DNA of 64,000 bases from the IMG/VR virus record IMGVR_UViG_3300023174_005338, positions 186,001 through 250,000 of that record. One strand, 5' to 3'. Position numbers and translations under genes: made by a program. A model generated the notes under the pieces. It was given only the letters and a program-made list of their open reading frames with translations. It was not told the DNA's origin and did not search any database. Below are positions 9,937 to 52,629 of the stretch, one piece after another (positions within the stretch are counted from its first letter, which is position 1; each line of letters begins with the position of its first letter).

Positions 9937-10308
9937 GTGCGTGACAAAAAGAAACTCACCGAAGAGCTGATAAAGCAACTGGATCCCGACCTGGGCGTCA
10001 CAGTCAAACAAGCCATGCAAACCTGGTGGTTCAACATAAGAAAAAACGGTGGTATGAGATTGACTGGGCCTGGTTACACAGTGTTCACAGAACAATTGGA
10101 TCTGGCACGCTACGAGTGGCCAATCCAGGATCCTCTGGCATTCAATCAACACATGATCCTGGATTTAGATAGGAAAATGCAGATGCCTTACTATATTTCA
10201 GCCACCAAAGGCATACCCAAAAAAATTGTGTTGTTTGGCAGCAAAGAAGCTGTCATGGTCAATCTCTATGGCAACCTACAACAATTTCTTGACAATTATA
10301 ACCCTTAG
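9937..10308 (+). CDS. Hypothetical phage protein
   Basis: GTG start right after the previous stop; in frame with track ORF 9841..10308. Confidence 0.6.
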   Translation: MRDKKKLTEELIKQLDPDLGVTVKQAMQTWWFNIRKNGGMRLTGPGYTVFTEQLDLARYEWPIQDPLAFNQHMILDLDRKMQMPYYISATKGIPKKIVLFGSKEAVMVNLYGNLQQFLDNYNP

Positions 10309-10317
10309 TGTTATAAT
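10289..10317 (+). promoter_or_regulatory. sigma70-type promoter for the CAU tRNA
   Basis: TTGACA-17 nt-TATAAT, 8 nt before the tRNA. Confidence 0.8.
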
Positions 10318-10325
10318 AAATTATT

Positions 10326-10413
10326 GGGCCGGACGCCGTATTGGTTGCAGGCAGCGGACTCATAATCCGCCTCAGAAATGACACTGTGGGTTCAAATCCC
10401 TCCCGGCCCACCA
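10326..10413 (+). tRNA. tRNA with CAT anticodon and long variable arm (Met/Ile2 by anticodon; charging identity uncertain)
   Basis: Acceptor GGGCCGG/CCGGCCC, A73, encoded CCA; anticodon arm GCGGA-CTCATAA-TCCGC; T arm GTGGG-TTCAAAT-CCCTC; 15 nt variable region. Confidence 0.85.
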
Positions 10414-10814: not shown

Positions 10815-10880
10815 ATGGAAGAATTTCAAAAACGGACATTGATTCTGGTGTTGTTGGCTTTCCATGCCATGACTATGTAG
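10815..10880 (+). CDS. Putative 21 aa micropeptide MEEFQKRTLILVLLAFHAMTM
   Basis: Manual translation; AGGAG RBS 6 nt before ATG. Confidence 0.45.
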   Translation: MEEFQKRTLILVLLAFHAMTM

Positions 10881-10886
10881 AATTGG

Positions 10887-10915
10887 TTGACACATAAATA
10901 GGTGTGTCGTATAAT
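10887..10915 (+). promoter_or_regulatory. sigma70-type promoter for tmRNA, with embedded CATAAATA
   Basis: TTGACA-17 nt-TATAAT; CATAAATA at 10893-10900. Confidence 0.8.
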
Positions 10916-10921
10916 AACGAT

Positions 10922-11177
10922 ATTGTTGTAATTCCTTCCAAGTGAAGGCGCTGTGGACCTGGGTGCAACTCCCAGCATCTCCACCCAAGTGTATTGTCTA
11001 GTATGTTTGGGCGGGGATGAATTAGGATCGACATGGTGAGCTAGTGCGGACGGCAACAGGCAAGGCGAAGGACCTAATCCTAGCAACTCTATTAAATGCA
11101 AACGCATCTAATGACGAGACCTTTGCCTTAGCGGCATGATCTCCGGGGCAACTATGCCTTGTGACCCAAACTAGTTC
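10922..11177 (+). ncRNA. ssrA: tmRNA, circularly permuted (two-piece); tag ANASNDETFALAA
   Basis: T arm CTGGG-TGCAACT-CCCAG and 3' acceptor CATCTCC-A (10959-10983) precede the 5' acceptor GGGGATG (11013-11019); G3.U70; tag frame 11098-11139; outer ends approximate. Confidence 0.9.
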
Positions 11178-11206
11178 AAAAAAAGCGACAGAAATGTCGC
11201 TTTTTT
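11178..11206 (+). terminator. Intrinsic terminator after tmRNA
   Basis: A7-GCGACA-GAAA-TGTCGC-T6. Confidence 0.85.
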
Positions 11207-11281
11207 GTTGACCTATGTCTACAATTACTAAATACTGGGTTGAGAAATCTCTCAGCATTCTTTTAAAAGGAAAATTCAAGC

Positions 11282-12403
11282 ATGAAAAAACTACTAGCAA
11301 CTATGTTGTTATCTCTTGGCGTAGCCACTTTGGCTCAAGCTCAGAGTTCAGTTACCATTTATGGTATCTTGGATGTGGGTTTCAGTGATAGAAATCTCAA
11401 AGGTTCTCCAGCAACAGCCACAAACACTCTCAACTCCAATCAGATTGGATCCAGCTACGAAACCGCTAGCCGTCTTGGTTTTCGAGGCACAGAGGATTTG
11501 GGCGGCGGCACTTCTGCATTCTTTACCATTGAAACTGGCCTGACACCAACCAGCTCCACAGTAAGCACATTCAATAATCGTCAAACATTTATTGGTCTTG
11601 GACAAAAAGGACTGGGTAATGTAGCCGTTGGTACACAGTATGGTCCAATCCACAAGGCTGTTGGTGTAACTGATCCAGGCCAGTACAACGGAGTTATTGG
11701 TTCGGTGATCTATCCAGCTGCTGGCACCGACGGTGGCCAAGCAAGTGTTGATGCGGCCTACACGATTCGTTTCGCGAATAGCGTGACAGCAACCATGGAT
11801 CGTCGTGCAGGCTTCAGTGCCAACGCGATCTACTCGCTCAACAACCAAGACAGCACCAAAACAGGTGCAACTACTGGTGGCACAGTCAACAACAACGCCT
11901 ATGGTCTTGGTGCTGACTACCTCATGGGTAAATTGTATGCTACCTTAGCATATCAAAGTGTCAAAAGCATCAACGACACATCAGCCACTGCCAGTGTTAG
12001 CTCGGCATTTGTTGGTACCAACACCACAGACAGCCAGCTTTATGCAGGTGCCACATATGATTTGGCCAAGGTCAAATTGTTTGCAGGTTACACTGATCGC
12101 AAGATCCAGAGCAATTTGAACAGCAATGCTAGTTTGAATCGTACAGCACAGCAGATTGGTGTACGTGGTTTCGTTACCAAGAAAGTTGAAGGTTGGGCTT
12201 CTGTGGGCAACGGCAAGTACAATGCATTTGGTACAAACCAAGCCACAGCCAACTTCACAGCTTACCAAGTTGGTAGCAACTACTGGATGAGCAAGCGCAC
12301 GAACTTGTATGCTATCGTAGGTAGCACACAAACTTCAAGCACAAGCCAAACCGGCGCACTCAGTGGCAACCAGTATGCCTTAGGCATGCGTCACACATTC
12401 TGA
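11282..12403 (+). CDS. Gram-negative outer-membrane porin, betaproteobacterial type
   Basis: Signal peptide ...AQA, SSVTIYGILDVG, SRLGFRGTEDLGGG, NNRQTFIGL, C-terminal GMRHTF. Confidence 0.9.
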   Translation: MKKLLATMLLSLGVATLAQAQSSVTIYGILDVGFSDRNLKGSPATATNTLNSNQIGSSYETASRLGFRGTEDLGGGTSAFFTIETGLTPTSSTVSTFNNRQTFIGLGQKGLGNVAVGTQYGPIHKAVGVTDPGQYNGVIGSVIYPAAGTDGGQASVDAAYTIRFANSVTATMDRRAGFSANAIYSLNNQDSTKTGATTGGTVNNNAYGLGADYLMGKLYATLAYQSVKSINDTSATASVSSAFVGTNTTDSQLYAGATYDLAKVKLFAGYTDRKIQSNLNSNASLNRTAQQIGVRGFVTKKVEGWASVGNGKYNAFGTNQATANFTAYQVGSNYWMSKRTNLYAIVGSTQTSSTSQTGALSGNQYALGMRHTF

Positions 12404-19050: not shown

Positions 19051-19130
19051 ACCCCGGTGGCGCAATTTTTGGTAGACGCACTCTCCTCAGAAGGGAGCTG
19101 TTGAAGGTTCGAATCCTTCCCGGGGTACCA
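19051..19130 (+). tRNA. trnL: tRNA-Leu(CAG) with short variable loop
   Basis: ACCCCGG/CCGGGGT, A73, CCA; Leu-type 3 bp D stem; loop CTCAGAA; 5 nt variable region. Confidence 0.85.
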
Positions 19131-41882: not shown

Positions 41883-42415
41883 AAATAAAAATAACTGCTG
41901 AGTCTGTAGGCGTCTGCTGGCACAGGATTAAACATACCATGCCATTGTAAGGGCTGGCTACCGTCAGGATCAAGATGATTCAACATGATGTAGCCTGAAT
42001 TGGGCACACTGTCAAATTGATGTTTCAAACTATTTGTGTTTTTAAAATGATAAAACCCAGTTCCGTACTGGTCACTGGGCATTATCCAATATAGTTGCAT
42101 GGCATTAGGTAAATGCCCGTCGGTGTGCATGCTACAAGTAAATCCAGGTTCGTCCAACCACCAGTGCCCGTGGCAGGATTGAAATTCAGTGCCCAGGCTC
42201 TGATTGATTGTTGGCAAACACTTTTCTATGTATCGATTGACTTGTCTGACTCGTGAGTCATCATTTGTAATTTTTCTACGGGGCCAATTTTCTTGAAGAT
42301 TTTCTTTTTGCCAAGGCAGTTCAGTCCATTGTATTACTAAAATTTCATTCAATTGCTCTTGGGGCAACAGATCACTCACATGCCATAAACGATGATCAAT
42401 TTGTTCAATCATCAA
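41873..42415 (-). CDS. Putative 2OG-Fe(II) oxygenase-like protein
   Basis: MHTD (HxD), distal WHG, RLSSY. Confidence 0.5.
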   Translation of the reverse strand: MMIEQIDHRLWHVSDLLPQEQLNEILVIQWTELPWQKENLQENWPRRKITNDDSRVRQVNRYIEKCLPTINQSLGTEFQSCHGHWWLDEPGFTCSMHTDGHLPNAMQLYWIMPSDQYGTGFYHFKNTNSLKHQFDSVPNSGYIMLNHLDPDGSQPLQWHGMFNPVPADAYRLSSYFYFYK

Positions 42416-43878
42416 CTGAAAACCTTAACTCCATACTTTTGTTCAAATCTATCAGCGTCAGCACGATCGTTGATCATAGGCTCGCCTCTAATGTTGAGAC
42501 TGGTATTCAGCAACATGGGACATCCAGTGGCTTCATACCAGGCCTCTAAGAGCGATCTAATGCCTGAGCCGTCAGACGCAACAGTCTGTACTCGGCTAGT
42601 GTTATCCACATGACAGATAGCAGGGTATAGGTCAGGACGGCGGCAATTTGCGACTGACTGCATATAAGGACTGCTATGCCAACCGCGGGGCATATGAAAA
42701 AGTTCATGCACATGCTCTGCCAGGACAACCGGCGCAAACGGTCTAAACTTTTGCCTACGTTTGATCTCATTGACTTGATCCTTTATATCTGATCCTCGGG
42801 GATCGGCGAGGAGACTTCGATTTCCAAGGGCTCGGGGTCCAAATTCTGCTCGACCACTAGCGACACCGACGATTCTATCACTTTGTAAATGATCAACGAG
42901 GGCATCAACAGGATACGTTCCTGAGATTGCATGGCCAAGGAACGCATTCCGCCAGTGGAGGCGTCTTCCATGGGCCAGTGCGGCAGCACCAAGGCTGTTG
43001 CCAGCATCGCCAGGACAAGGCATGATCCAAATGTTTTCAAAATATTCACCGAGTTTTCTATTAGCAAGACAGTTCAAAGCCACGCCGCCCTGATAGACTA
43101 GATTAGAACTCCAGCCAAATTCTTGGGCACGACGCATAACACTATATATCAATTCTTCTGTTAAAACCTGGGCACTTGCGGCAATATCTTCGTTGGATGC
43201 AGACCGCAACCAGTCAGGCTCAATGCCTATGTGTAGATTGTCTTCCAGCAAGGCCCGGCATTCTTCAACGTAACATGGCTGTCCGTAGGCACTCATGCCC
43301 ATGGTGATGTATTCTTCATCTAGGGGGTGTAGGCCAATGCGCTGAGTAATCGCACTATAAAACAGCCCGATGCTCCTGGGATAAGTTTGGCTCCAAAGTT
43401 TCTTATAACATGCTCGATTTGTTGCGTTATATTCTGCTCCCCATATCGAGATGGTATCAAACTCGCCTATGGCATCTACGATCACACAAGTGGCACGATC
43501 GTAGGGGCTGGTTTGAAAACCTGCAGCCGCATGGCACAGGTGATGACTGTAAGTTTTTATCTGTCCGGGCGGATGTTGCAACCATGAGCCCAATTGATTC
43601 TTTAATATCTGCTTGACAGTCACATTGGACCAATCTATACCTTGTCCTGACACAAAATTACGTGCTTGTTTTAACCAAGGACGTTCATAATATGCAATGG
43701 TGTCTATGTCGTATTCACAGAATTCTGTCAATAATTCTGGACAAAGATTGGCATCGTTTTTCTTTTTTGAATATCGTTCGCTGTGACCGGCAAATACAAT
43801 TTCACCGTCGCTGCGTATGAGCGTGGCAGCTGCGTCATGAAATCCAGCACTGAGTCCCAGTGTGTACTGATGCTTCAT
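42412..43878 (-). CDS. Carbamoyltransferase (CmcH/NodU/TobZ family)
   Basis: GFHDAAA, HHLCHA, GGVALN, GPRALGNRSLLADPR, RPFAP, LNTSLN. Confidence 0.93.
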   Translation of the reverse strand: MKHQYTLGLSAGFHDAAATLIRSDGEIVFAGHSERYSKKKNDANLCPELLTEFCEYDIDTIAYYERPWLKQARNFVSGQGIDWSNVTVKQILKNQLGSWLQHPPGQIKTYSHHLCHAAAGFQTSPYDRATCVIVDAIGEFDTISIWGAEYNATNRACYKKLWSQTYPRSIGLFYSAITQRIGLHPLDEEYITMGMSAYGQPCYVEECRALLEDNLHIGIEPDWLRSASNEDIAASAQVLTEELIYSVMRRAQEFGWSSNLVYQGGVALNCLANRKLGEYFENIWIMPCPGDAGNSLGAAALAHGRRLHWRNAFLGHAISGTYPVDALVDHLQSDRIVGVASGRAEFGPRALGNRSLLADPRGSDIKDQVNEIKRRQKFRPFAPVVLAEHVHELFHMPRGWHSSPYMQSVANCRRPDLYPAICHVDNTSRVQTVASDGSGIRSLLEAWYEATGCPMLLNTSLNIRGEPMINDRADADRFEQKYGVKVFS

Positions 43879-43976
43879 TTGTAAATAAACGGGTCTCGTT
43901 TGCGAAGTTCTTTTAATTTTTTACGATAACGAATTTCTAATTTGATACGATCGATTAAGATTTTTATCCAAGACAT
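43875..43976 (-). CDS. 33 aa basic peptide MSWIKILIDRIKLEIRYRKKLKELRKRDPFIYK
   Basis: Manual translation; fills the gap and is ATGA-coupled to the carbamoyltransferase. Confidence 0.6.
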   Translation of the reverse strand: MSWIKILIDRIKLEIRYRKKLKELRKRDPFIYK

Positions 43977-45019
43977 TTGATTTGTTTCTCCATGTAATCG
44001 GTGTCACTCCAGTCATATTCATACTCATCACCGGCTGTGCTGGTGCGTATGGCATGAACATTAAGATGTGTATTTAATTGATGCCAAATTTCACGATAAT
44101 CTTCTGTTCCAAAACTGCGAACAAGATCCACTTGCCCTACCTGTGGATGTCCAATGGTCAAACTCTTGTTGTTTGGGTCAATGCCATTGGCCGTTAGCCA
44201 TTCGCGGAATTCCTTTAACTGTCGGATCTGCCAGGGAAATTCACCCGGATTGTTGGCCCACTCTATGTCAAAGTCGCCCGCGGCCTCAGTCTGATTTTTG
44301 AGGCTGGTGGTTGTGAGTTCTCCTAGTCTTGAGTCACGTCCTTCGTCCTGGAACACTTCCCAGTGATGTTTGCCAACGGCTTTGTTCACACCCACATATA
44401 CTCCGCCCAGACTGCGATTGATTGTGTCAATCCCAAACAGTTCATAGTCTTCTGCATCCAACACGAATCTTGGAGCTGATAGCCAGCACATGAGTTGGCT
44501 GGGTCTTTGCCATTCAGGTGCTGTGTGTTTTTTGCGCCACGATAGCTGCCAGCTTTCAAACTCGTGACACAGGAGATTTAATTGTCTGATGTGCCAGCGT
44601 GTGGCGTTGTCGGCACGCCAGTAGTAATCGCTGATGTGTCCGCTGCTGCCTTGTAGATCTTCAAAGTATCTGTGCAGTTGATTGAAATGATCGTGATTGA
44701 CTCCGCCTCGATCATCCACACTGTTGATCATATCAAAGTGATCCGTTATATGATATCCTATGCTGGAATTGTTTATGGCCTGTATGCTGAGATTTATTTG
44801 TTCCAATAGATAAGGGCCATTTCTAGGACCGTCTGCAAATCCAAAAAAACAATAGTTCTTTTCCAAGTGATAATTATTTTGTAGAAGATTGTTCAAAGCG
44901 GCCAGCCATTTGCGACTGAGACTGTTGTCATACACGTTGACATACACACGCAACACATTGTCTGGCGTGCCTAGATCTAGCTCTACAACATCAAGCGGTA
45001 ATTGATTGGTACCAGTCAT
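43964..45019 (-). CDS. Hypothetical protein
   Basis: 351 aa ORF coupled within the radical SAM operon. Confidence 0.7.
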   Translation of the reverse strand: MTGTNQLPLDVVELDLGTPDNVLRVYVNVYDNSLSRKWLAALNNLLQNNYHLEKNYCFFGFADGPRNGPYLLEQINLSIQAINNSSIGYHITDHFDMINSVDDRGGVNHDHFNQLHRYFEDLQGSSGHISDYYWRADNATRWHIRQLNLLCHEFESWQLSWRKKHTAPEWQRPSQLMCWLSAPRFVLDAEDYELFGIDTINRSLGGVYVGVNKAVGKHHWEVFQDEGRDSRLGELTTTSLKNQTEAAGDFDIEWANNPGEFPWQIRQLKEFREWLTANGIDPNNKSLTIGHPQVGQVDLVRSFGTEDYREIWHQLNTHLNVHAIRTSTAGDEYEYDWSDTDYMEKQIKCLG

Positions 45020-46298
45020 AGATATCCTGATTTGATCTTAGTATGTCGGCCATGGTATAGGAATCGCCACGTATTTGTTCTAATTTTAGCACACGACGTT
45101 TGCCTTTTGCAAGTTCTGCTTGCCATTGTTCAGGCCATTGTTCAGCGAATGTGGGTCGTTGTTTGAGTTGTAGCAACACATCTTGTAAGGCACCAGCAGG
45201 CAGTTTTGCTACCAGATTGTCTACGGTGCTGTCTAACAACGGTCTAGGCAAGGCCAAAGGACTCATAATGATATCGGGAGTAAAACTAAATATTACCTTG
45301 GCCAAGACATCCACTCCTAGCTCATCGGCTAGCTGTTGTATGTTTTCCACTTCAAACAGGCCAGGCAAGGTCAAAGTAAAGTCAATGCGCATTTGTCTGC
45401 GATGTCGAACATGTTCAAGGCCTTGTTTAAAGTTTACCAACCACCCATCGTAGGCCAGTCCTGTGCGGATGTATTCTCCTGTTTTTCCTGTTCCGTCGAG
45501 GCTGGCACAAATTTGCCAATCACGTAGATATACCAAGACATCACGGTAAAGATTACAACCACGCCAATACACGCGACTGAGATTAGTATTGTATCTTGCA
45601 TAAACATTTTTTGCATCTCCTAGTTCAATAATTCTGCGCATGTAGCGCCAGTGTTGTTCGTACATCAGTGGTTCGCCGCCCACCCAATAAACTTCTTCCA
45701 CACGATGTTGTTCCACAGCCAAGGCAAATTCAGCTTCAATCTGGCTGTCTTGATAGGCTGTGATTTGTTCGCGCACAGCGGGTTGCATCCAGGTGTTTTT
45801 GGGATTGCTCCAATCAATCATGTTGTGTTGACGTTGTTCGCTTTCCCACGCACTGGATAACATGTCTCCGCAAGTACGACATTTGAAATTACAAAGATTA
45901 CTGAATCTGTAATCCCAACTCACAGGTCGAACCCGGGTGAATCCATAGCGATCTGTAGACCTCATACATTCTTCATATTTGTGTTCAAACAATCGATTGA
46001 AATAATCTCTATATACATCAGTGTTCAATAACTTGTTGTTGCACACTTCGCATTCAGGCAATGTCTCGCCTTTCATCATTCTTAACCTCACGCTTCGCAT
46101 GTGAGGACTGTTCCAGTGTTCGTCTAGGCCAACCGGTTGATAGGTACCAGTGCCGGTGGCAGTGTCAATATACTGTTCAAAGTTTTGTGCAGGTTCTCTG
46201 CTGGCACAACACATGCGTCTTTCAGTTTGTGGACTAAGGTATGTGTGTGTCCATGGCGCCATGCACAAGGTTTCGGGTCTTTTAGCAGGGGCCGGCAT
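44991..46298 (-). CDS. Radical SAM protein with N-terminal twitch/SPASM-like domain
   Basis: CMAPW...MCC...CEVC; CNFKCRTC; VGGEP; NTNL. Confidence 0.88.
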   Translation of the reverse strand: MPAPAKRPETLCMAPWTHTYLSPQTERRMCCASREPAQNFEQYIDTATGTGTYQPVGLDEHWNSPHMRSVRLRMMKGETLPECEVCNNKLLNTDVYRDYFNRLFEHKYEECMRSTDRYGFTRVRPVSWDYRFSNLCNFKCRTCGDMLSSAWESEQRQHNMIDWSNPKNTWMQPAVREQITAYQDSQIEAEFALAVEQHRVEEVYWVGGEPLMYEQHWRYMRRIIELGDAKNVYARYNTNLSRVYWRGCNLYRDVLVYLRDWQICASLDGTGKTGEYIRTGLAYDGWLVNFKQGLEHVRHRRQMRIDFTLTLPGLFEVENIQQLADELGVDVLAKVIFSFTPDIIMSPLALPRPLLDSTVDNLVAKLPAGALQDVLLQLKQRPTFAEQWPEQWQAELAKGKRRVLKLEQIRGDSYTMADILRSNQDIYDWYQSITA

Positions 46299-47499
46299 AT
46301 TCTATCAATTGTGCAAATTCGGGTTCCACGGTGGCAAGATTTTGTTGTCGTTTGCGATCAAGATCGGCCACTCGCATGCGCAGTATAAATCCATCTAAAC
46401 TGGCACCATTGTTCATAAAATCAACGATTTTGATAAATTCATCCTGATGTTGTTGACTGACCTGTGCCTGACCAAGTCTTTGTGTTACTGTTTGTTTGAC
46501 CGACTCGGGCAAGGTATTGATACTGAAATAGTAGGCTTCATGCATCATATTCCAATACACAAAATCAAATGACTGCGTATCGATCCACGTGGCCAGGTCT
46601 TCAAGATAGTACACATTGAACACATTCACGGTACTACATACTTGTAGTTGTATATTGCTATGGCGATCACGCATGAGCGCAAATTTGTTTATATTTTCTA
46701 CCACCTCTGACCATACGGCATTGGTGCGTTGATATTCAAATCTAGCACCCACGTCATCGATGCTGAAAGCTATTTCCACAGTTTTAAAATGTTGCCATAC
46801 GTGCTCGGCCTGCTCAGGATACTGTGTGCCGTTGGTATTGTAGTGTATTTCTATGTTGCGAGCTAGACCGCGATCCACCAGGCGTTGCAACAGGTCAAAG
46901 TGTTCTTGTATCATGAATGGTTCACCACCAGTAAACTCGATGTATCTGATCTGATCTGATACTTGTTCAATCTCCTGCCAGAATGTGGGATTCTCTCTGG
47001 GCCAGGCACCTGCCCGCAACATTTGATAGTGATGATTGCTTTTGCGATCTTCGTCAGGTCCTAGGTTGGCCAGTTCTTCTGTGGCAAAGGTGCTTGAGCT
47101 CCAGCTACCACAGATACGGCATTTAAGATTACATATATTGCCCAATTTTAAATCTAAAAACATCAAAGGTTCGGCATCTAATGTCCAGTCTGTCACAGGT
47201 AACATGTGCTTGAGTCTGTCCAAGGTGTGCATGCGTTTGCTAGTACGGCCTGCACGTTCTTCTCTCCAGCACTTGCGGCATGTTTGTGGTTGTTCACCAT
47301 CAATAAACTGTTGTCTTAATCTGCGCATACTATGGCTATTTTGTATGGTGGCAAACTTGGCAGTGGCCAGATTAAACTTTTCTCCTGAGTTATCTACTAT
47401 TTCTTCTTCGGCCAAGCAACAAGGTCTCACAGTGCCAACGGGACTGGTTTCCAAGCTGACCCAAGGCAACACACAAAATTTATTGTGAGGTATTTTCAT
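46282..47499 (-). CDS. Radical SAM protein with N-terminal twitch/SPASM-like domain
   Basis: CVLPW...PCC...CRKC; CNLKCRIC; TGGEP; NTNG. Confidence 0.88.
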   Translation of the reverse strand: MKIPHNKFCVLPWVSLETSPVGTVRPCCLAEEEIVDNSGEKFNLATAKFATIQNSHSMRRLRQQFIDGEQPQTCRKCWREERAGRTSKRMHTLDRLKHMLPVTDWTLDAEPLMFLDLKLGNICNLKCRICGSWSSSTFATEELANLGPDEDRKSNHHYQMLRAGAWPRENPTFWQEIEQVSDQIRYIEFTGGEPFMIQEHFDLLQRLVDRGLARNIEIHYNTNGTQYPEQAEHVWQHFKTVEIAFSIDDVGARFEYQRTNAVWSEVVENINKFALMRDRHSNIQLQVCSTVNVFNVYYLEDLATWIDTQSFDFVYWNMMHEAYYFSINTLPESVKQTVTQRLGQAQVSQQHQDEFIKIVDFMNNGASLDGFILRMRVADLDRKRQQNLATVEPEFAQLIEYAGPC

Positions 47500-48848
47500 A
47501 ATTGTTTTAAAATTCTATGTTGTCTTCCGGCTGGTGCTCGAGTTGATTCTGGTCTATACTGCATGATCGCTTGCAATTCTGGAACCACATCAATCAATTG
47601 TTCATTGCGACACCAGTCAAGATCATCCACAGTGCGCCAAAAATCTGGCAGTAGATGTTGATTGTTCGTGGCCATCATGAACTCTATGGCTCCACGAAAT
47701 CCGCCCACAGCTCTTTGTATGGTATCAATAGGTTGGAGCCAGGCAATGTGATCTTCAAAATCCTGTTTGAATTGCTGTTTGATTTCTGGCGGCAACATGT
47801 CTATGCGATAGTTCTGAGGACCTTGCAGGATATTCAAGTTGAAATCCTTGGCCTCAATAAATCCTGATTCCACCATGTAGCGATGAAAACGAGTAAAGTT
47901 CCAGATGTTCATCATGCTAAGAGTAGGACTGATCATGAAATCTATGTGCGGACATTCTCTTTTGAGATCACGTATGTTTTGTTCTACTTTGTCCCAGTTG
48001 GTGCCTGATCTTATAACCTCAGCTCTGGCCCCCATGTCATCCAAGCTGGCAGCAACACAAACATTCGGAAAGTGTTTCCATAATTCTAACACACTTTCTC
48101 TTTTGTAGTTTAAATCATTGAGATTGGTATTGTAGATCAATCGCACATTGGTATTGCCTTTTTCAATCAGCAGTTTAAGAATGCGATTGTGTTCTTCCAT
48201 GATCAAAGGTTCGCCACCGGCAAAGTATATCTGTTCCAGGTGTGGAATGTGCTCTTGCATTTGTTCCCATACATCTTCTTCATGGCGCCCAGCAAAACTC
48301 ACACGTGGACGCAATTCTTTGCCCCAGAGTTTGACATCATCATCATACCACCGGCTGCTGAATATACTGCCACAACTGCGACATTTTAATTGACAGATGT
48401 TGCTGAATCTCACGTCCCAGTAGTGCAATTGAAAATCTGGGTAGGTTCCGTCGGGTAAGGTTTGATCTACACTGTCTATGAACTGTGCAAAGTTTTTGTT
48501 GCTGTTGTTACGCATGCTGGCAAAACCTGCGGCTTCTTGTTCATAGCAATCAGCACACTCTCGACAGGGCCGGTCATCCAACATGTTACGACGCATTTCA
48601 CGCATGGGCTCATCATTCCAAATTTCACGCATGGTCTTTTCTTTGAAGTTGCCCACTGGATGTTTGGCTACTCCCAAGCAACAAGGATAAGCACGACCGT
48701 CGGGCCAGGCATGCAAATGTATCCAAGGCAACATGCAGAACGAGTCCGAATCCATGAGTCGGTGACGTTGTTGTTCGGTAAGATCTTCTAGTTTGACGTA
48801 GCTGGGAACTCGGTCATTCCAGTTATATTTGCCTAATATTTTGCTCAT
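47496..48848 (-). CDS. Radical SAM protein with N-terminal twitch/SPASM-like domain
   Basis: CMLPW...PCC...CADC; CQLKCRSC; AGGEP; NTN. Confidence 0.88.
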   Translation of the reverse strand: MSKILGKYNWNDRVPSYVKLEDLTEQQRHRLMDSDSFCMLPWIHLHAWPDGRAYPCCLGVAKHPVGNFKEKTMREIWNDEPMREMRRNMLDDRPCRECADCYEQEAAGFASMRNNSNKNFAQFIDSVDQTLPDGTYPDFQLHYWDVRFSNICQLKCRSCGSIFSSRWYDDDVKLWGKELRPRVSFAGRHEEDVWEQMQEHIPHLEQIYFAGGEPLIMEEHNRILKLLIEKGNTNVRLIYNTNLNDLNYKRESVLELWKHFPNVCVAASLDDMGARAEVIRSGTNWDKVEQNIRDLKRECPHIDFMISPTLSMMNIWNFTRFHRYMVESGFIEAKDFNLNILQGPQNYRIDMLPPEIKQQFKQDFEDHIAWLQPIDTIQRAVGGFRGAIEFMMATNNQHLLPDFWRTVDDLDWCRNEQLIDVVPELQAIMQYRPESTRAPAGRQHRILKQL

Positions 48849-50182
48849 AATGTATCGTACCATTCTTTCAGCACAGGAAATGTCTCCGTAAAGTTTTTGT
48901 TTCTACGCTGATCGTATTGTGTATAAAACTGTCGGAAATCGTTGAGTAGTTTAGGCATGTCAAAGGCTTCACTGTGTGGAGTTTTCACTTGGTCTAGGTA
49001 TGCTATCAATCGCTGAGTGTGATTGACCTCATGTTCGTGCATGTAATCTTGATTGCGATGTTTGTCTAACCACATGATCAAACGATTACGATAATATAAC
49101 TTCAAATGCTCAGGCAAGACCAATGAGCTTTGAAAACTAGGAAATCTTAGAATATTCAGGGTAAAGCTCACACGTTCACGCCCATAGACCTTTTTCAATC
49201 GCACCAATTGATCTAAAAACGTGTCCAGGCTGTCTAAACACAAGGCATTGATGGTGCACATGACATGAACAGCACGTATGTGATCATGCTCCAAGAGTTC
49301 TTGCGCATTGTGCATCCAAAGATCATAGTCTAGCCCGTCTCTGATGTATTCGGCCTGGGTGCCGTGGGCTTCATTGCTGGTATAAATTTCCAAGTGTGGT
49401 ATATCCTTTGTTTTTTCCACAAACTCCAACAACTTGAGACGATCCATGCCTAGATTTGAGTTGATGGCCAGGCGTGTGGAACTTTTGCCTTTGTTGGTCT
49501 TGAACCAGTCAATCAGCCGCCACAGTTCACCGCTCATGGTAGGCTCGCCGCCGGTTATGCGGAGTTCTTGTAAGGTCTTGTGTAGATCGGATTCCCACCA
49601 GGCAAAAAATGCATCAACATAGGGATTTGATTCGCCAAATCGATACACTTGAGCACTGTCATGTTCGTGTGTGAAATGATTACGACCATCGCTGACAAGA
49701 TTTGTATAGGCGCCGTTGTTTCGGATATCCTTGACCCAGGTGCTGCTGAAAGCAGGATTACAATAACTGCAAGCAAACTGGCAGGTGCGATCAAACGCTA
49801 TTTCAAGAGTACGTAGATTCACGTCGTCTTGTGGCGGCGTGGCAAATGCCTGATCAAGGGCCTCTAAGGGATATATTTTGCTTTTGTAAACACGGTCACT
49901 GACAGCATCCACTCCCATGTCTTCAATCTTCCAGCAGTACTCACAGCCAGGCGGACGTTCACCGGTCAGCATTTGCACACGGTCTTGTTTCTTTTGTTTG
50001 GTGTTGTGTATAGCACTGGGATTGGTCTTGATTTCTTCTCGATCAATGGCATGTGCCGGTGGATGATGGCAACTGGTAGTCTGTCCTGATCCCAACCATA
50101 TGGTAGCATTGTACCACTTGGCCGCACAGAAGCTGGCACTTTTAGTGTCCAGGACTTGTTGTTTAAACTCCAGATCGTTCAT
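48845..50182 (-). CDS. Radical SAM protein (CxAKW/HPP subfamily)
   Basis: CAAKW...SCHHPP...CEYC; CQFACSYC; TGGEP; NSNL. Confidence 0.88.
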   Translation of the reverse strand: MNDLEFKQQVLDTKSASFCAAKWYNATIWLGSGQTTSCHHPPAHAIDREEIKTNPSAIHNTKQKKQDRVQMLTGERPPGCEYCWKIEDMGVDAVSDRVYKSKIYPLEALDQAFATPPQDDVNLRTLEIAFDRTCQFACSYCNPAFSSTWVKDIRNNGAYTNLVSDGRNHFTHEHDSAQVYRFGESNPYVDAFFAWWESDLHKTLQELRITGGEPTMSGELWRLIDWFKTNKGKSSTRLAINSNLGMDRLKLLEFVEKTKDIPHLEIYTSNEAHGTQAEYIRDGLDYDLWMHNAQELLEHDHIRAVHVMCTINALCLDSLDTFLDQLVRLKKVYGRERVSFTLNILRFPSFQSSLVLPEHLKLYYRNRLIMWLDKHRNQDYMHEHEVNHTQRLIAYLDQVKTPHSEAFDMPKLLNDFRQFYTQYDQRRNKNFTETFPVLKEWYDTL

Positions 50183-51230
50183 TGATATATTGGGCAAACT
50201 GTTGTGGGAACTCTTTACGAACTTGCAGACGAAGTTCTGCCAAGCGTTGTTGATTGTATTTACATTTATCTTCTGCAGCCGTTATAAAACTTGATAAATC
50301 TTGCCGGCAAAGATCGTTGACCACGGTCACTATGCGGGCCAGGCGTTCTTGATTGTTGTCAATTTGATCAAATGATTCATCTATCACGTGACCAAAGGTT
50401 TGAAATCCTAACTTGTGTATATCACGATAGTAGCCTCGGTTGGCTACGGCTATCCACGGGTGTCCAATTGCTACTGGCTTCCATATCTTTTCTGTTCTAA
50501 AACTGTACGGATAATCAAATACAGTCTCAGTTACTAGGCTAAAGTAAGTGTCGAGATATGGCCTAGGATTAAGATATATTTCGCCCCAATCGTTGTTGAA
50601 CAATGCCGGTTTGGCATATCCTGACATAGACATGGTAGTATTTTGTTTGTAAAAATCAAATTCATAACAAGCGGGTAAAAGTTTGATATCACCTGCTGCC
50701 GAGTCCAAGTTGGTCCACAGAGCTTGATCCAACACGTTGGCCAGATTGTCTAACAACTGTCGACGATGACGCCGTCCACGACCATTCAGACACAAAAACT
50801 TGTAAGGTCGCGAATCTGACCATTGATCCTTGTACTGCTGTATGGCCAAGTAGTTCTCACTGTAGTCAAGAATCTTGGGCATGAAGTTTTCGTAGTAAAG
50901 ATAAGGTATATCCGATTGCATGTGCCCACCCGAGATGATCAAGATACGACCTTGCTGGACCAGTTCTTGTATGCCCAGGCCTTGTATTTGCCGGAGCATG
51001 GTGTCGCTGCCTTCGGCTGGATTGCCCAGTATGGGTAGTATGGTGCCTTGAGTGGCTAGGTCACGTATGCGATCAATGTTGGCGTTGAACTGTTGACGAC
51101 TGATAAGATAGATTGCTCCGGGTATCACCTTGTGCGTGGCAAAGTCATAGAAAGATTCATCTTGCCAGGCTCTGGTGAACTCCTTGACTTCACAACATTG
51201 ATCAACAACCAGCTTACGATTGCCGAGCAT
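50163..51230 (-). CDS. Hypothetical protein, GT-B/fucosyltransferase-like C-terminus
   Basis: ETVFD...RTEKIWKPV...GFQTF...DESFD; start uncertain (51230 or 51257). Confidence 0.55.
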   Translation of the reverse strand: MLGNRKLVVDQCCEVKEFTRAWQDESFYDFATHKVIPGAIYLISRQQFNANIDRIRDLATQGTILPILGNPAEGSDTMLRQIQGLGIQELVQQGRILIISGGHMQSDIPYLYYENFMPKILDYSENYLAIQQYKDQWSDSRPYKFLCLNGRGRRHRRQLLDNLANVLDQALWTNLDSAAGDIKLLPACYEFDFYKQNTTMSMSGYAKPALFNNDWGEIYLNPRPYLDTYFSLVTETVFDYPYSFRTEKIWKPVAIGHPWIAVANRGYYRDIHKLGFQTFGHVIDESFDQIDNNQERLARIVTVVNDLCRQDLSSFITAAEDKCKYNQQRLAELRLQVRKEFPQQFAQYINERSGV

Positions 51231-52629
51231 GGTACTCACATTCCGCCCACCAGGCACTCATTTCAGGAAACACAGTCAAAAAATCAGTACCGTGCCTGCG
51301 ATCTGCTTCGTTAAAAAAGCGATAAAAGTCTGCTTTGTTTTGTTTTATATATGTGGGATCCAGTTGTTGGCCATCACGCATCCAGGCTATGTCACGATCT
51401 AGCCTAGCTATCTCATAATCTTTGAATCCTTGGAATCTGGTGGCTTCAGTTTCTGTTTGTCGTATCATCCAGGCCCAAAGATATTCTAACTGTTCTGCAT
51501 ACGACTCGGGCAAGATTTGCAGGCTCTGCCAGGCGGGTTGGCGCAACACCGGAGTATCAAACCATACTCGTTGATAAGTCTTGCTGTAAATTTTACGCAG
51601 ACCCAGTATGCCTGCAAACAAATTTGGAAGTCCAGTAACACTTAGATTGTTCATGGTCACGATAAATGTCACACTGTTACGACCAGGAATCTCAGTAAGG
51701 AACTGATTTACTCTGTCCCACAATAAATCAAAGTTCAGGCCGTGTCTGATGTATTCGGCCTGTGAACCAAAACTGTCAAGACTGACATACTGCATGAAGT
51801 GTTCAATCCGTTCGCCCTCACACAATTGTTTGACATAGCCTAGATACTTCTGCCAAGATTTTTCATCCACGCTGAAGTTTGATGTCACGTTCAAGTGTAA
51901 ATCTGGTTTGGGATTGTCCAACACATAGTCAAACACTCGATAGGTATTTCGATCTAGTAAAGGTTCACCACCGGTCATACGGAAGTGTTCCAGTTCTGGA
52001 TATAAGGTAGGCCACCACGCCCAAAACGCATCCACATAAGGGTTTTGTTCTCTTACTGGTATAGGACGATTACGCCCAACAAAGTGGCTAGGATCATTGT
52101 GGACAGTTGAAGTAGGATATCCACCATGGGTGTTAACTTCCTGCTGCCAGGTGCTCGAAAACTGCGGACTGCAATAGCTACAAGCAAGATTACAAGCATG
52201 ATTAAAATTGACTTCGACATAACTAGGGACAACATCTTCATCTCCGATTGAATTTACTACAACATCAAAGTCCTTGGCAGCCCAGGGCTCACCACTACGG
52301 TAGTGTCTATCTGATAATTTGTTGTTATCTTCCATTGCCCAACAATAGCCGCACTCGCTAGAGCGTTCTTGCCGTAACATTATCTTACGCTGTTCTTTTT
52401 TGTGCGGAGTATTATGTAACGCACTAGGATTGTCTGCTAATAGCTCTGCAGGAATAGGGTGCAGTGGAGGATGATAACAACTGTTGTTAAGCCCTGTGGG
52501 CAAGTGTAGGCTAACCTGTTTCCATTTGGCCAAGCAGAGTGCGGGGCCAAGATTCGCCTTCATGAACTCTGCATCGCCTAGGAATTTTGATTTAAAGTCG
52601 GTTACAACTTCATCGCCTTTGTTTTGCAA
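51214..52629 (-). CDS. Radical SAM protein (CxAKW/HPP subfamily)
   Basis: CLAKW...SCYHPP...CGYC; CNLACSYC; TGGEP; TSNF; TTG start. Confidence 0.88.
   Translation of the reverse strand: MQNKGDEVVTDFKSKFLGDAEFMKANLGPALCLAKWKQVSLHLPTGLNNSCYHPPLHPIPAELLADNPSALHNTPHKKEQRKIMLRQERSSECGYCWAMEDNNKLSDRHYRSGEPWAAKDFDVVVNSIGDEDVVPSYVEVNFNHACNLACSYCSPQFSSTWQQEVNTHGGYPTSTVHNDPSHFVGRNRPIPVREQNPYVDAFWAWWPTLYPELEHFRMTGGEPLLDRNTYRVFDYVLDNPKPDLHLNVTSNFSVDEKSWQKYLGYVKQLCEGERIEHFMQYVSLDSFGSQAEYIRHGLNFDLLWDRVNQFLTEIPGRNSVTFIVTMNNLSVTGLPNLFAGILGLRKIYSKTYQRVWFDTPVLRQPAWQSLQILPESYAEQLEYLWAWMIRQTETEATRFQGFKDYEIARLDRDIAWMRDGQQLDPTYIKQNKADFYRFFNEADRRHGTDFLTVFPEMSAWWAECEYHARQS

What the first reader, a model, noticed from the sequence alone, without database searches (positions are those of the whole stretch)
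10326..10413. CAU-anticodon tRNA on a class II (long variable arm) scaffold
Seen: 88 nt tRNA with CAT anticodon, 3 bp D stem with a 12 nt loop, a 15 nt variable region containing a TCA-GAAA-TGA hairpin, A at position 8, A73 and a U.U pair in the T stem. It has its own consensus promoter. Established: bacterial long variable arms are normally limited to Leu, Ser, Tyr and Sec tRNAs; bacterial LeuRS relies on A73 and D-arm architecture rather than the anticodon. Inference: it may be an unusual Met/Ile2 tRNA that evades tRNA-targeting defences, or be charged with another amino acid and so mistranslate AUG/AUA.
Basis: partly seen in the sequence, partly recalled or inferred. Interest (0 to 1): 0.65.

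Follow-up and report, generated by a model that had tools for sequence, protein, structure and literature searches.

The report
Phage copy of long-armed tRNA-Ile2
This jumbo-phage gene is a real, promoter-driven tRNA with a CAU anticodon and an extra arm; it is the form of the AUA-reading isoleucine tRNA (tRNA-Ile2) used by Ralstonia, Cupriavidus and Paraburkholderia, most likely carried to feed the phage's many AUA codons, not to mistranslate or dodge defences.

Summary
Window 10326-10413 (+) is an 88-nt tRNA with a CAU anticodon, a 3-bp D stem with a 12-nt loop, a 15-nt variable arm (3-bp stem plus GAAA loop), A8, A73, a U50.U64 mismatch and a 12/12 sigma-70 promoter.

It is not a one-off. 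The same scaffold occurs in at least 27 viral contigs and 84 Burkholderiaceae genomes, always with CAU. Covariation is strong, and all three variable-arm pairs co-vary.

In six host genomes checked for CAU tRNAs, the only ones found are initiators, one universal elongator-Met type and this gene. In a 121-genome family sample:
- all 14 carriers lack the canonical class I tRNA-Ile2, which 74 other genomes have;
- six genomes have a 77-nt intermediate with the same acceptor stem, A8 and T arm.

The five carriers tested keep an intact TilS.

The tRNA has G3:C70, C4:G69 and C5:G68, the published TilS determinants. It lacks the Met acceptor-stem determinants and the A14 needed for Leu identity.

AUA runs at 18.1 per 1000 codons in the phage against 1.2 in a Ralstonia proxy host; AUG is not enriched.

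Verdict: a phage-borne, lineage-specific tRNA-Ile2 for AUA decoding (confidence about 0.8). Mistranslation and defence evasion are not supported. I found no paper describing the class II architecture. Charging and lysidine modification remain untested.

The parts
10289..10294 (+). -35 hexamer TTGACA of the tRNA's own promoter
   Evidence: 12/12 match, 17-nt spacer
10312..10317 (+). -10 hexamer TATAAT, preceded by TG. It ends 8 nt before G1, so I infer a primary transcript with a leader of about 0-2 nt
10326..10413 (+). 88-nt tRNA gene, anticodon CAU, CCA encoded: class II-shaped tRNA-Ile2
10326..10332 (+). acceptor stem 5' strand GGGCCGG, pairing with 10403-10409. It carries G3:C70, C4:G69 and C5:G68
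   Evidence: All 7 pairs co-vary. TilS determinants are from PMC12514573
10333..10334 (+). A8 C9, invariant in the family. A8 goes with U14 (10339), the reverse of the usual U8:A14
   Evidence: 42/42 A:U
10335..10352 (+). D arm: 3-bp stem GCC/GGC and 12-nt loop with G18 G19. A15 (10340) co-varies with U48 (10385)
10354..10370 (+). anticodon arm GCGGA-CTCATAA-TCCGC, with anticodon CAT at 10361-10363. Identical to the Ralstonia condita gene
10371..10385 (+). 15-nt variable arm. The hairpin TCA-GAAA-TGA is at 10372-10381; the last base (10385) acts as position 48
   Evidence: 3/3 stem pairs co-vary, 100% paired. Levitt pair
10386..10402 (+). T arm GTGGG-TTCAAAT-CCCTC with a U50.U64 mismatch
10403..10413 (+). 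acceptor stem 3' strand CCGGCCC, discriminator A73 (10410) and CCA (10411-10413)

Best explanation
The gene encodes tRNA-Ile2, the minor isoleucine tRNA that is transcribed with a CAU anticodon. It reads AUA only after the host enzyme TilS converts C34 to lysidine, after which IleRS charges it. It has the unusual shape this tRNA has in one Burkholderiaceae lineage (Ralstonia, Cupriavidus, Paraburkholderia, Trinickia): a hairpin in the variable region, a 3-bp D stem and a reversed 8:14 pair. The acceptor stem and anticodon arm of the ordinary tRNA-Ile2 are kept. The 337-kb, 46% GC phage expresses its own copy from a consensus promoter to raise the supply of an AUA decoder in a GC-rich host that hardly uses AUA. 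Shown here: the structure, its conservation and covariation, the gene-content logic in hosts, the identity nucleotides and the codon-usage gap. Inferred: lysidine modification, charging with Ile, expression, and the actual host of this phage.
For: 1. Real, conserved tRNA.
2. The D-arm signature is tied only to CAU: 27/27 viral and 84/84 bacterial called genes.
3. The full inventory of Ralstonia condita gives 48 tRNAs. Three have CAU: an initiator, a 77-nt class I gene with an A32 loop, and this class II gene. The only other Ile tRNA is GAU and there is no UAU. No group I intron that could hide another Ile2 was found.
4. Five more carriers show the same picture.
5. In a 121-genome family sample, 14 have the class II gene and none of them has the canonical class I Ile2 signature, which 74 others have. 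Six have a 77-nt intermediate with the same acceptor stem, A8 and T arm.
6. The A32 class I type is present in carriers and non-carriers alike, so it is the elongator Met.
7. The canonical class I type aligns with the PGAP-annotated E. coli tRNA-Ile(CAT).
8. TilS is intact in 5/5 carriers, 164-168 bits against a cut-off of 93.6.
9. G3:C70, C4:G69 and C5:G68 are present. These are the determinants shown experimentally for B. cenocepacia and E. coli TilS (PMC12514573). A73 and C4-G69 are Ile determinants (PMC9976931).
10. Phage ATA is 18.1 per 1000 codons against 1.2 in the proxy host; ATG is 20.3 against 24.4. Other contigs with phage-type copies have 35-54% GC and ATA at 6-29 per 1000.
11. The nearest cultured phage infects Ralstonia solanacearum.
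Against:
- The host of this metagenomic phage is inferred, not known.
- The E. coli IleRS determinants U12-A23 and C29-G41 are not present, though the canonical Burkholderiaceae Ile2 also lacks C29-G41.
- The mutual exclusivity may reflect one or a few evolutionary events.
- The phage has no TilS of its own, so extra tRNA helps only if host TilS is not limiting.
- Codon counts rest on crude ORF calls.
Confidence: 0.8

Rival explanations
1. It is an elongator tRNA-Met: C34 stays unmodified, MetRS charges it through the CAU anticodon, and it reads AUG.
For: CAU and A73 are the main MetRS determinants (PMC9976931). ARAGORN labels it Met by anticodon. Unmodified tRNA-Ile2 can be methionylated to some degree (PMC12514573).
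Against: It lacks U4-A69 and A5-U68. Carriers and non-carriers all have a separate, nearly identical elongator-Met-type gene. If this were Met, carriers would have TilS and AUA codons but no Ile2. AUG is not enriched in the phage.
Confidence: 0.07
2. It is a leucine-type class II tRNA with a changed anticodon. LeuRS, which ignores the anticodon, charges it, so AUG or AUA is read partly as Leu (deliberate mistranslation, as proposed for nematode nev-tRNAs).
For: Class II shape, 3-bp D stem, A73. BLAST relatives include a phage tRNA-Leu(UAA) with a similar variable arm. nev-tRNAs are leucylated in vitro (PMC3333845).
Against: A14 and the U8:A14 pair, key to Leu identity in E. coli and A. aeolicus, are replaced by U14/A8 in all 42 sequences. 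It is a single-copy core gene that takes the place of Ile2 in its hosts. A class I intermediate links it to Ile2, not to Leu.
Confidence: 0.04
3. The phage copy mainly serves as a nuclease-resistant replacement or decoy against a host tRNA-cleaving defence. This could hold alongside codon supply.
For: Phage-type copies form their own lineage with A15:U48 and often U50.U64. Phage tRNAs that escape anticodon nucleases are known (my own knowledge).
Against: The odd scaffold is the host's own. The anticodon stem-loop is identical to the host's. No defence system targeting tRNA-Ile2 is known to me. The AT-ward changes match the phage's lower GC.
Confidence: 0.06
4. It is an integration target (attP-like copy of the host tRNA) or a decaying passenger gene.
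For: Proviruses do sit next to the host gene, and a truncated copy exists (L005, L009, L016, L029, L033).
Against: No tyrosine integrase in the phage. The record has direct terminal repeats. The gene is full-length with every helix intact, a perfect promoter and an encoded CCA.
Confidence: 0.02

Closest known systems
Bacterial tRNA-Ile2 (ileX type; CAU anticodon converted to lysidine-AU by TilS)
   Same: CTCATAA anticodon loop, A73, and the G3:C70, C4:G69 and C5:G68 acceptor pairs of the B. cenocepacia substrate. It takes the place of this gene in host genomes. Phages of lower GC than their hosts often carry tRNAs for A-ending codons (my own knowledge).
   Different: 15-nt variable arm with a co-varying hairpin instead of a 5-nt loop; 3-bp D stem with a 12-nt loop; A8:U14 instead of U8:A14.
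Bacterial tRNA-Leu (class II)
   Same: Overall class II outline, 3-bp D stem, A73, and a short variable-arm hairpin with a GNRA-type loop.
   Different: CAU anticodon; no A14; acceptor stem of Ile2 type; linked by a class I intermediate to Ile2.
Nematode nev-tRNAs (class II tRNAs with Gly or Ile anticodons; PMC3333845)
   Same: A long variable arm on a tRNA whose anticodon belongs to a class I amino acid.
   Different: nev-tRNAs are extra genes leucylated in vitro. This one replaces the normal decoder and lacks a key Leu determinant.
allo-tRNAs (8/4 or 9/3 acceptor/T structure; PMC5389517)
   Same: Non-canonical long-armed bacterial and phage tRNAs with unexpected anticodons.
   Different: This tRNA has the standard 7/5 acceptor/T geometry and A73, not Ser identity.

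Membership tests
tRNA (Rfam RF00005) | Cloverleaf with four helices, T-loop TTCRANN, G18 G19 | tested here: met
   44.2 bits against a cut-off of 29; ARAGORN; 99.3% of cells paired across 42 sequences
Class II (long variable arm) tRNA | Variable region longer than 10 nt that forms a stem-loop | tested here: met
   15 nt; 3-bp stem plus GAAA loop; 3/3 pairs with compensatory changes and no mispair
tRNA-Ile2 | CAU anticodon in a C32-U33-CAU-A37-A38 loop, with A73 | tested here: met
tRNA-Ile2 | TilS acceptor-stem determinants C4:G69 and C5:G68, plus G3:C70 for the Burkholderia enzyme | tested here: met
   GGGCCGG/CCGGCCC; determinants from PMC12514573
tRNA-Ile2 | It is the only candidate AUA decoder in genomes that keep tilS | tested here: met
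tRNA-Ile2 | Lysidine at position 34 and charging by IleRS | not testable with these tools
   needs LC-MS or tRNA-seq and charging assays
tRNA-Ile2 | E. coli IleRS core determinants U12-A23 and C29-G41 | tested here: not met
   C12-G23 and G29-C41. The canonical Burkholderiaceae class I Ile2 also has G29-C41, so these are probably not used in this lineage
Elongator tRNA-Met | U4-A69 and A5-U68 with the CAU anticodon (PMC9976931) | tested here: not met
   C4-G69 and C5-G68; a separate Met-type gene is present in all genomes looked at
Initiator tRNA-fMet | C1xA72 mismatch and three G-C pairs at the bottom of the anticodon stem | tested here: not met
   G1-C72; stem ends G-C, G-C, A-U; separate initiator genes exist in hosts
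tRNA-Leu | A73 plus A14 / the U8:A14 tertiary pair (PMC9976931) | tested here: not met
   A73 is present, but position 14 is U and position 8 is A in 42/42 sequences
tRNA-Ser / tRNA-Tyr | Ser: G73 and a long variable stem. Tyr: GUA anticodon | tested here: not met
   A73, 3-bp variable stem, CAU anticodon

The most novel reading that the evidence does not exclude
The extra arm and the reversed 8:14 pair are not neutral decoration. They would be an added identity device that this lineage evolved to keep tRNA-Ile2 apart from tRNA-Met, for example by blocking MetRS on the unmodified precursor or helping TilS/IleRS. That would make this the first natural class II tRNA serving a class I amino acid in the core translation of free-living bacteria, with a phage sub-lineage (A15:U48, U50.U64) tuned separately.
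Probability: 0.25. Interest if true: 0.7.

Novelty: new variant of a known kind. Interest (0 to 1): 0.5.

Why it matters
Textbooks and recent reviews limit bacterial long variable arms to Leu, Ser, Tyr and Sec. Here an essential minor tRNA of well-studied genera (Ralstonia, Cupriavidus, Paraburkholderia) and of their phages breaks that rule, with a class I intermediate preserved in relatives. That gives a natural series for asking how TilS, IleRS, MetRS and LeuRS tolerate or use a variable arm and an 8:14 swap.

It is also a practical warning for annotation. Anticodon-only tools call it tRNA-Met, and its shape suggests Leu. For the phage itself the biology is ordinary: supplying a rare-codon tRNA.

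Tried and rejected
- Megablast of the locus against GenBank phages found nothing.
- One search used a wrong spacer (the real gap is 23) and is void.
- A group I intron hiding a second Ile2, as reported for some Burkholderia (PMC8450103), was looked for. None was found in two carriers. The one in P. sacchari lies in tRNA-Leu(UAA).
- The 36 pattern hits in other phyla are chance 18-mers in coding DNA. An extra CAU-like hit in G001 is not a tRNA.
- BLAST of the Met-type gene against E. coli was uninformative.
- Ralstonia phage RsoM2USA, the only cultured relative, has about 46 tRNAs but not this one.
- No TilS and no integrase in the phage.
- Eight literature searches found no description of a long-armed tRNA-Ile2. 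This covers only the held library.
- The large protein searches, structure prediction and complex prediction were not needed.

Full report
WHAT IS THERE

The window is bases 186001-250000 of a 337,119-bp virus record with direct terminal repeats. It has about 46% GC and densely packed genes.

ARAGORN and Rfam both call a tRNA at 10326-10413 (+) with anticodon CAT. Read from the sequence, it has:
- a perfect 7-bp acceptor stem GGGCCGG/CCGGCCC, then A8 C9;
- a 3-bp D stem with a 12-nt loop;
- anticodon arm GCGGA-CTCATAA-TCCGC;
- a 15-nt variable region with the hairpin TCA-GAAA-TGA;
- T arm GTGGG-TTCAAAT-CCCTC with U50.U64;
- A73 and an encoded CCA.

A 12/12 TTGACA-17-TATAAT promoter with an extended -10 TG ends 8 nt before G1.

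The whole phage has only this tRNA, a permuted tmRNA, Cys-GCA, Trp-CCA, Glu-UUC, Thr-UGU and one further tRNA seen only by Rfam.

IT IS A FAMILY, NOT AN ODDITY

A pattern that fixed only part of the anticodon arm and the T loop, and required class II spacing, found 29 IMG/VR loci. 24 of them carry called class II CAU genes, and 18 of those share an almost invariant D arm including A8 C9.

A pattern on that D arm alone found 31 viral loci. All 27 called genes have CAU and are 86-88 nt long.

84 are 88-nt CAU tRNAs, nearly all from Paraburkholderia, Ralstonia, Cupriavidus, Trinickia and 'Burkholderia sp.'. The other 36, from other phyla, are chance 18-mers in coding sequence.

On 42 distinct sequences, 99.3% of cells pair and 15 of 23 pairs show changes on both sides. 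All three variable-arm pairs co-vary without a single mispair. No shuffle of 500 reaches this, and slid controls pair at 31-54%. D-arm invariance is partly imposed by the search pattern, but one search did not constrain it.

Two tertiary signals fit an L-shaped fold:
- Position 8:14 is A:U in 42/42 sequences, the reverse of the usual U8:A14.
- Position 15 and the last variable-arm base are A:U in all 16 phage-type copies, and G:C in all 22 bacterial copies and the 4 provirus-edge copies. This may be a single evolutionary event.

WHAT IT IS IN THE HOSTS

A full tRNA inventory of Ralstonia condita gives 48 tRNAs. Three have CAU: an initiator, a 77-nt class I gene with an A32 loop and acceptor GGCGAAU, and the class II gene. 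The only other Ile tRNA is GAU, and none has UAU. So the class II gene must be either the elongator Met or Ile2.

The tRNAscan-SE 2.0 paper warns that some Burkholderia hide Ile2 behind a group I intron. No such intron is found in R. condita or P. sediminicola, and the one in P. sacchari lies in tRNA-Leu(UAA).

Family members without the class II gene have the same A32-type gene plus a third class I CAU gene, with acceptor GGGCC.. and a U43-UGGU variable loop. That third gene aligns along its length with the E. coli gene that PGAP annotates as tRNA-Ile with CAT. It is therefore the canonical Ile2, and the universal A32 type is the elongator Met.

In a sample of 121 family genomes:
- 14 have a full-length class II gene, and none of them has the canonical Ile2 signature, which 74 of the others have.
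- Six further large genomes have neither. They have a 77-nt CAU tRNA with the same GGGCCGG acceptor, A8 and T arm as the class II gene, but a 5-nt variable loop. This is an intermediate form.

Five more carriers show only initiators and one Met-type gene. The five carriers tested keep an intact TilS. Enzyme present, canonical substrate not found, AUA codons in use: the class II gene is the only candidate substrate.

IDENTITY NUCLEOTIDES

Published work shows that E. coli TilS uses C4:G69 and C5:G68. B. cenocepacia TilS in addition needs G3:C70, which alone restores 60% of activity when put into E. coli tRNA-Ile2 (PMC12514573). The phage tRNA has all three pairs; the Met-type gene has none.

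The identity review lists A73 and C4-G69 for bacterial Ile, U4-A69 and A5-U68 for Met, and A73 with A14 / U8:A14 for Leu (PMC9976931). The phage tRNA fits the Ile acceptor-stem set, fails the Met acceptor pairs and lacks A14. It also lacks the E. coli Ile core pairs U12-A23 and C29-G41, but so does, for 29-41, the canonical Ile2 of this family.

The tRNAscan-SE supplement flags no Ralstonia or Cupriavidus genome as missing a CAU subtype. This implies that automatic isotype models already sort this gene into Met or Ile2.

WHY THE PHAGE CARRIES IT

By crude ORF calling, ATA is 18.1 per 1000 codons in the phage and 1.2 in R. condita loci. That is a 15-fold excess and the largest absolute gap of any codon. 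ATG is 20.3 against 24.4.

Other contigs with phage-type copies have 35-54% GC and ATA at 6-29 per 1000. Provirus-edge host-type loci have 58-62% GC and ATA at 2-6 per 1000.

The phage copy differs from the nearest bacterial gene (Paraburkholderia acidicola) at 5 of 88 positions and from Ralstonia copies at 7. Its anticodon arm is identical to the host's. The only cultured relative found through a window protein is Ralstonia phage RsoM2USA, which does not carry this gene. The phage has no TilS and no integrase.

RIVALS

An elongator-Met role fails on gene content and acceptor pairs. Leucine mischarging fails on A14 and on the gene's role as the sole AUA decoder. Defence evasion fails because the scaffold and anticodon arm are the host's own, though the distinct phage sub-lineage leaves a small door open. 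An att-site or pseudogene reading fails on intact helices, the promoter and the lack of an integrase. None of these was tested biochemically.

LIMITS

- The host of this metagenomic phage is inferred.
- Host genomes are drafts and sample genomes unnamed, so absences are 'not found in those searched'.
- The exclusivity pattern may rest on few evolutionary events.
- No expression or modification data could be obtained.
- Eight literature searches found no description of a long-armed tRNA-Ile2, but only the held library was searched.

VERDICT

The gene is a phage-borne member of a lineage-specific, class II-shaped tRNA-Ile2 family, used for AUA decoding. It is ordinary as phage biology and unusual as tRNA architecture.

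Noticed in passing
window 19051-19127 (+): A tRNA seen only by Rfam (50.2 bits), not by ARAGORN. It has a Leu-type D arm, anticodon loop CTCAGAA (CAG, Leu), A73 and CCA, but only a 5-nt variable loop. This is a class I-shaped tRNA-Leu, the mirror image of the finding.
   Followed up: partly
window 10873-11230 (+): A permuted (two-piece type) tmRNA with tag ANASNDETFALAA. It matches the Betaproteobacteria tmRNA model (131.6 bits) and has its own 12/12 promoter at 10887-10915. The Burkholderiaceae hosts' own tmRNA type was not checked.
   Followed up: no
window 11282-12403 (+): A phage-encoded Gram-negative porin (Pfam Porin_4, E 2.4e-36) directly after the tmRNA.
   Followed up: no
L002:373-460 (Rhodobacter phage RcXuper, OP186293 11855-11942): An 88-nt gene annotated tRNA-Lys(ctt). 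It has the same anticodon stem, variable-arm design (TGC-GAAA-GCA) and T arm as this family, but U8 G9, another D arm and anticodon CUU, one base from CAU. It is a second class II tRNA with a class I anticodon.
   Followed up: partly
L013:12833-12927, L020:1238-1329, L024:4036-4130, L038:10039-10129: ARAGORN-95-nt 'tRNA-Ile(tat)' genes with very long variable regions in viral contigs that also carry the class II CAU gene; in L020 and L038 they sit beside tRNA-Leu(taa). They could be a second, TilS-independent AUA decoder.
   Followed up: no
L010:1134-1220, L032:1676-1761, L030:7569-7654: Unrelated 86-87-nt CAU tRNAs with long variable regions in other large viral contigs. L010 also has 88-90-nt Val(tac) and Cys(gca) calls, so long arms on class I anticodons may be wider spread in phages.
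   Followed up: no
L042, L043, L046 (about 80 nt from the D-arm match): The D-arm signature is followed by an insertion before CTCATAA. This may be an intron-bearing or degenerate copy, and ARAGORN does not call it.
   Followed up: no
L033:860-905; L005, L009, L016, L029 (contig edges): A 5' half-copy that ends right after CTCATA, and host-type copies at the edges of 42-53 kb proviruses from isolate genomes. The host tRNA-Ile2 gene looks like a prophage attachment site.
   Followed up: partly
L229:1470-1840 (Paraburkholderia sacchari): A group I intron (48.4 bits, just under the cut-off) interrupts tRNA-Leu(UAA) in the anticodon loop.
   Followed up: yes
window 42412-52629 (-): A carbamoyltransferase (Nol-like, E 6e-92) and three radical-SAM proteins lie in a row, possibly a nucleotide- or sugar-modification cluster.
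   Followed up: no
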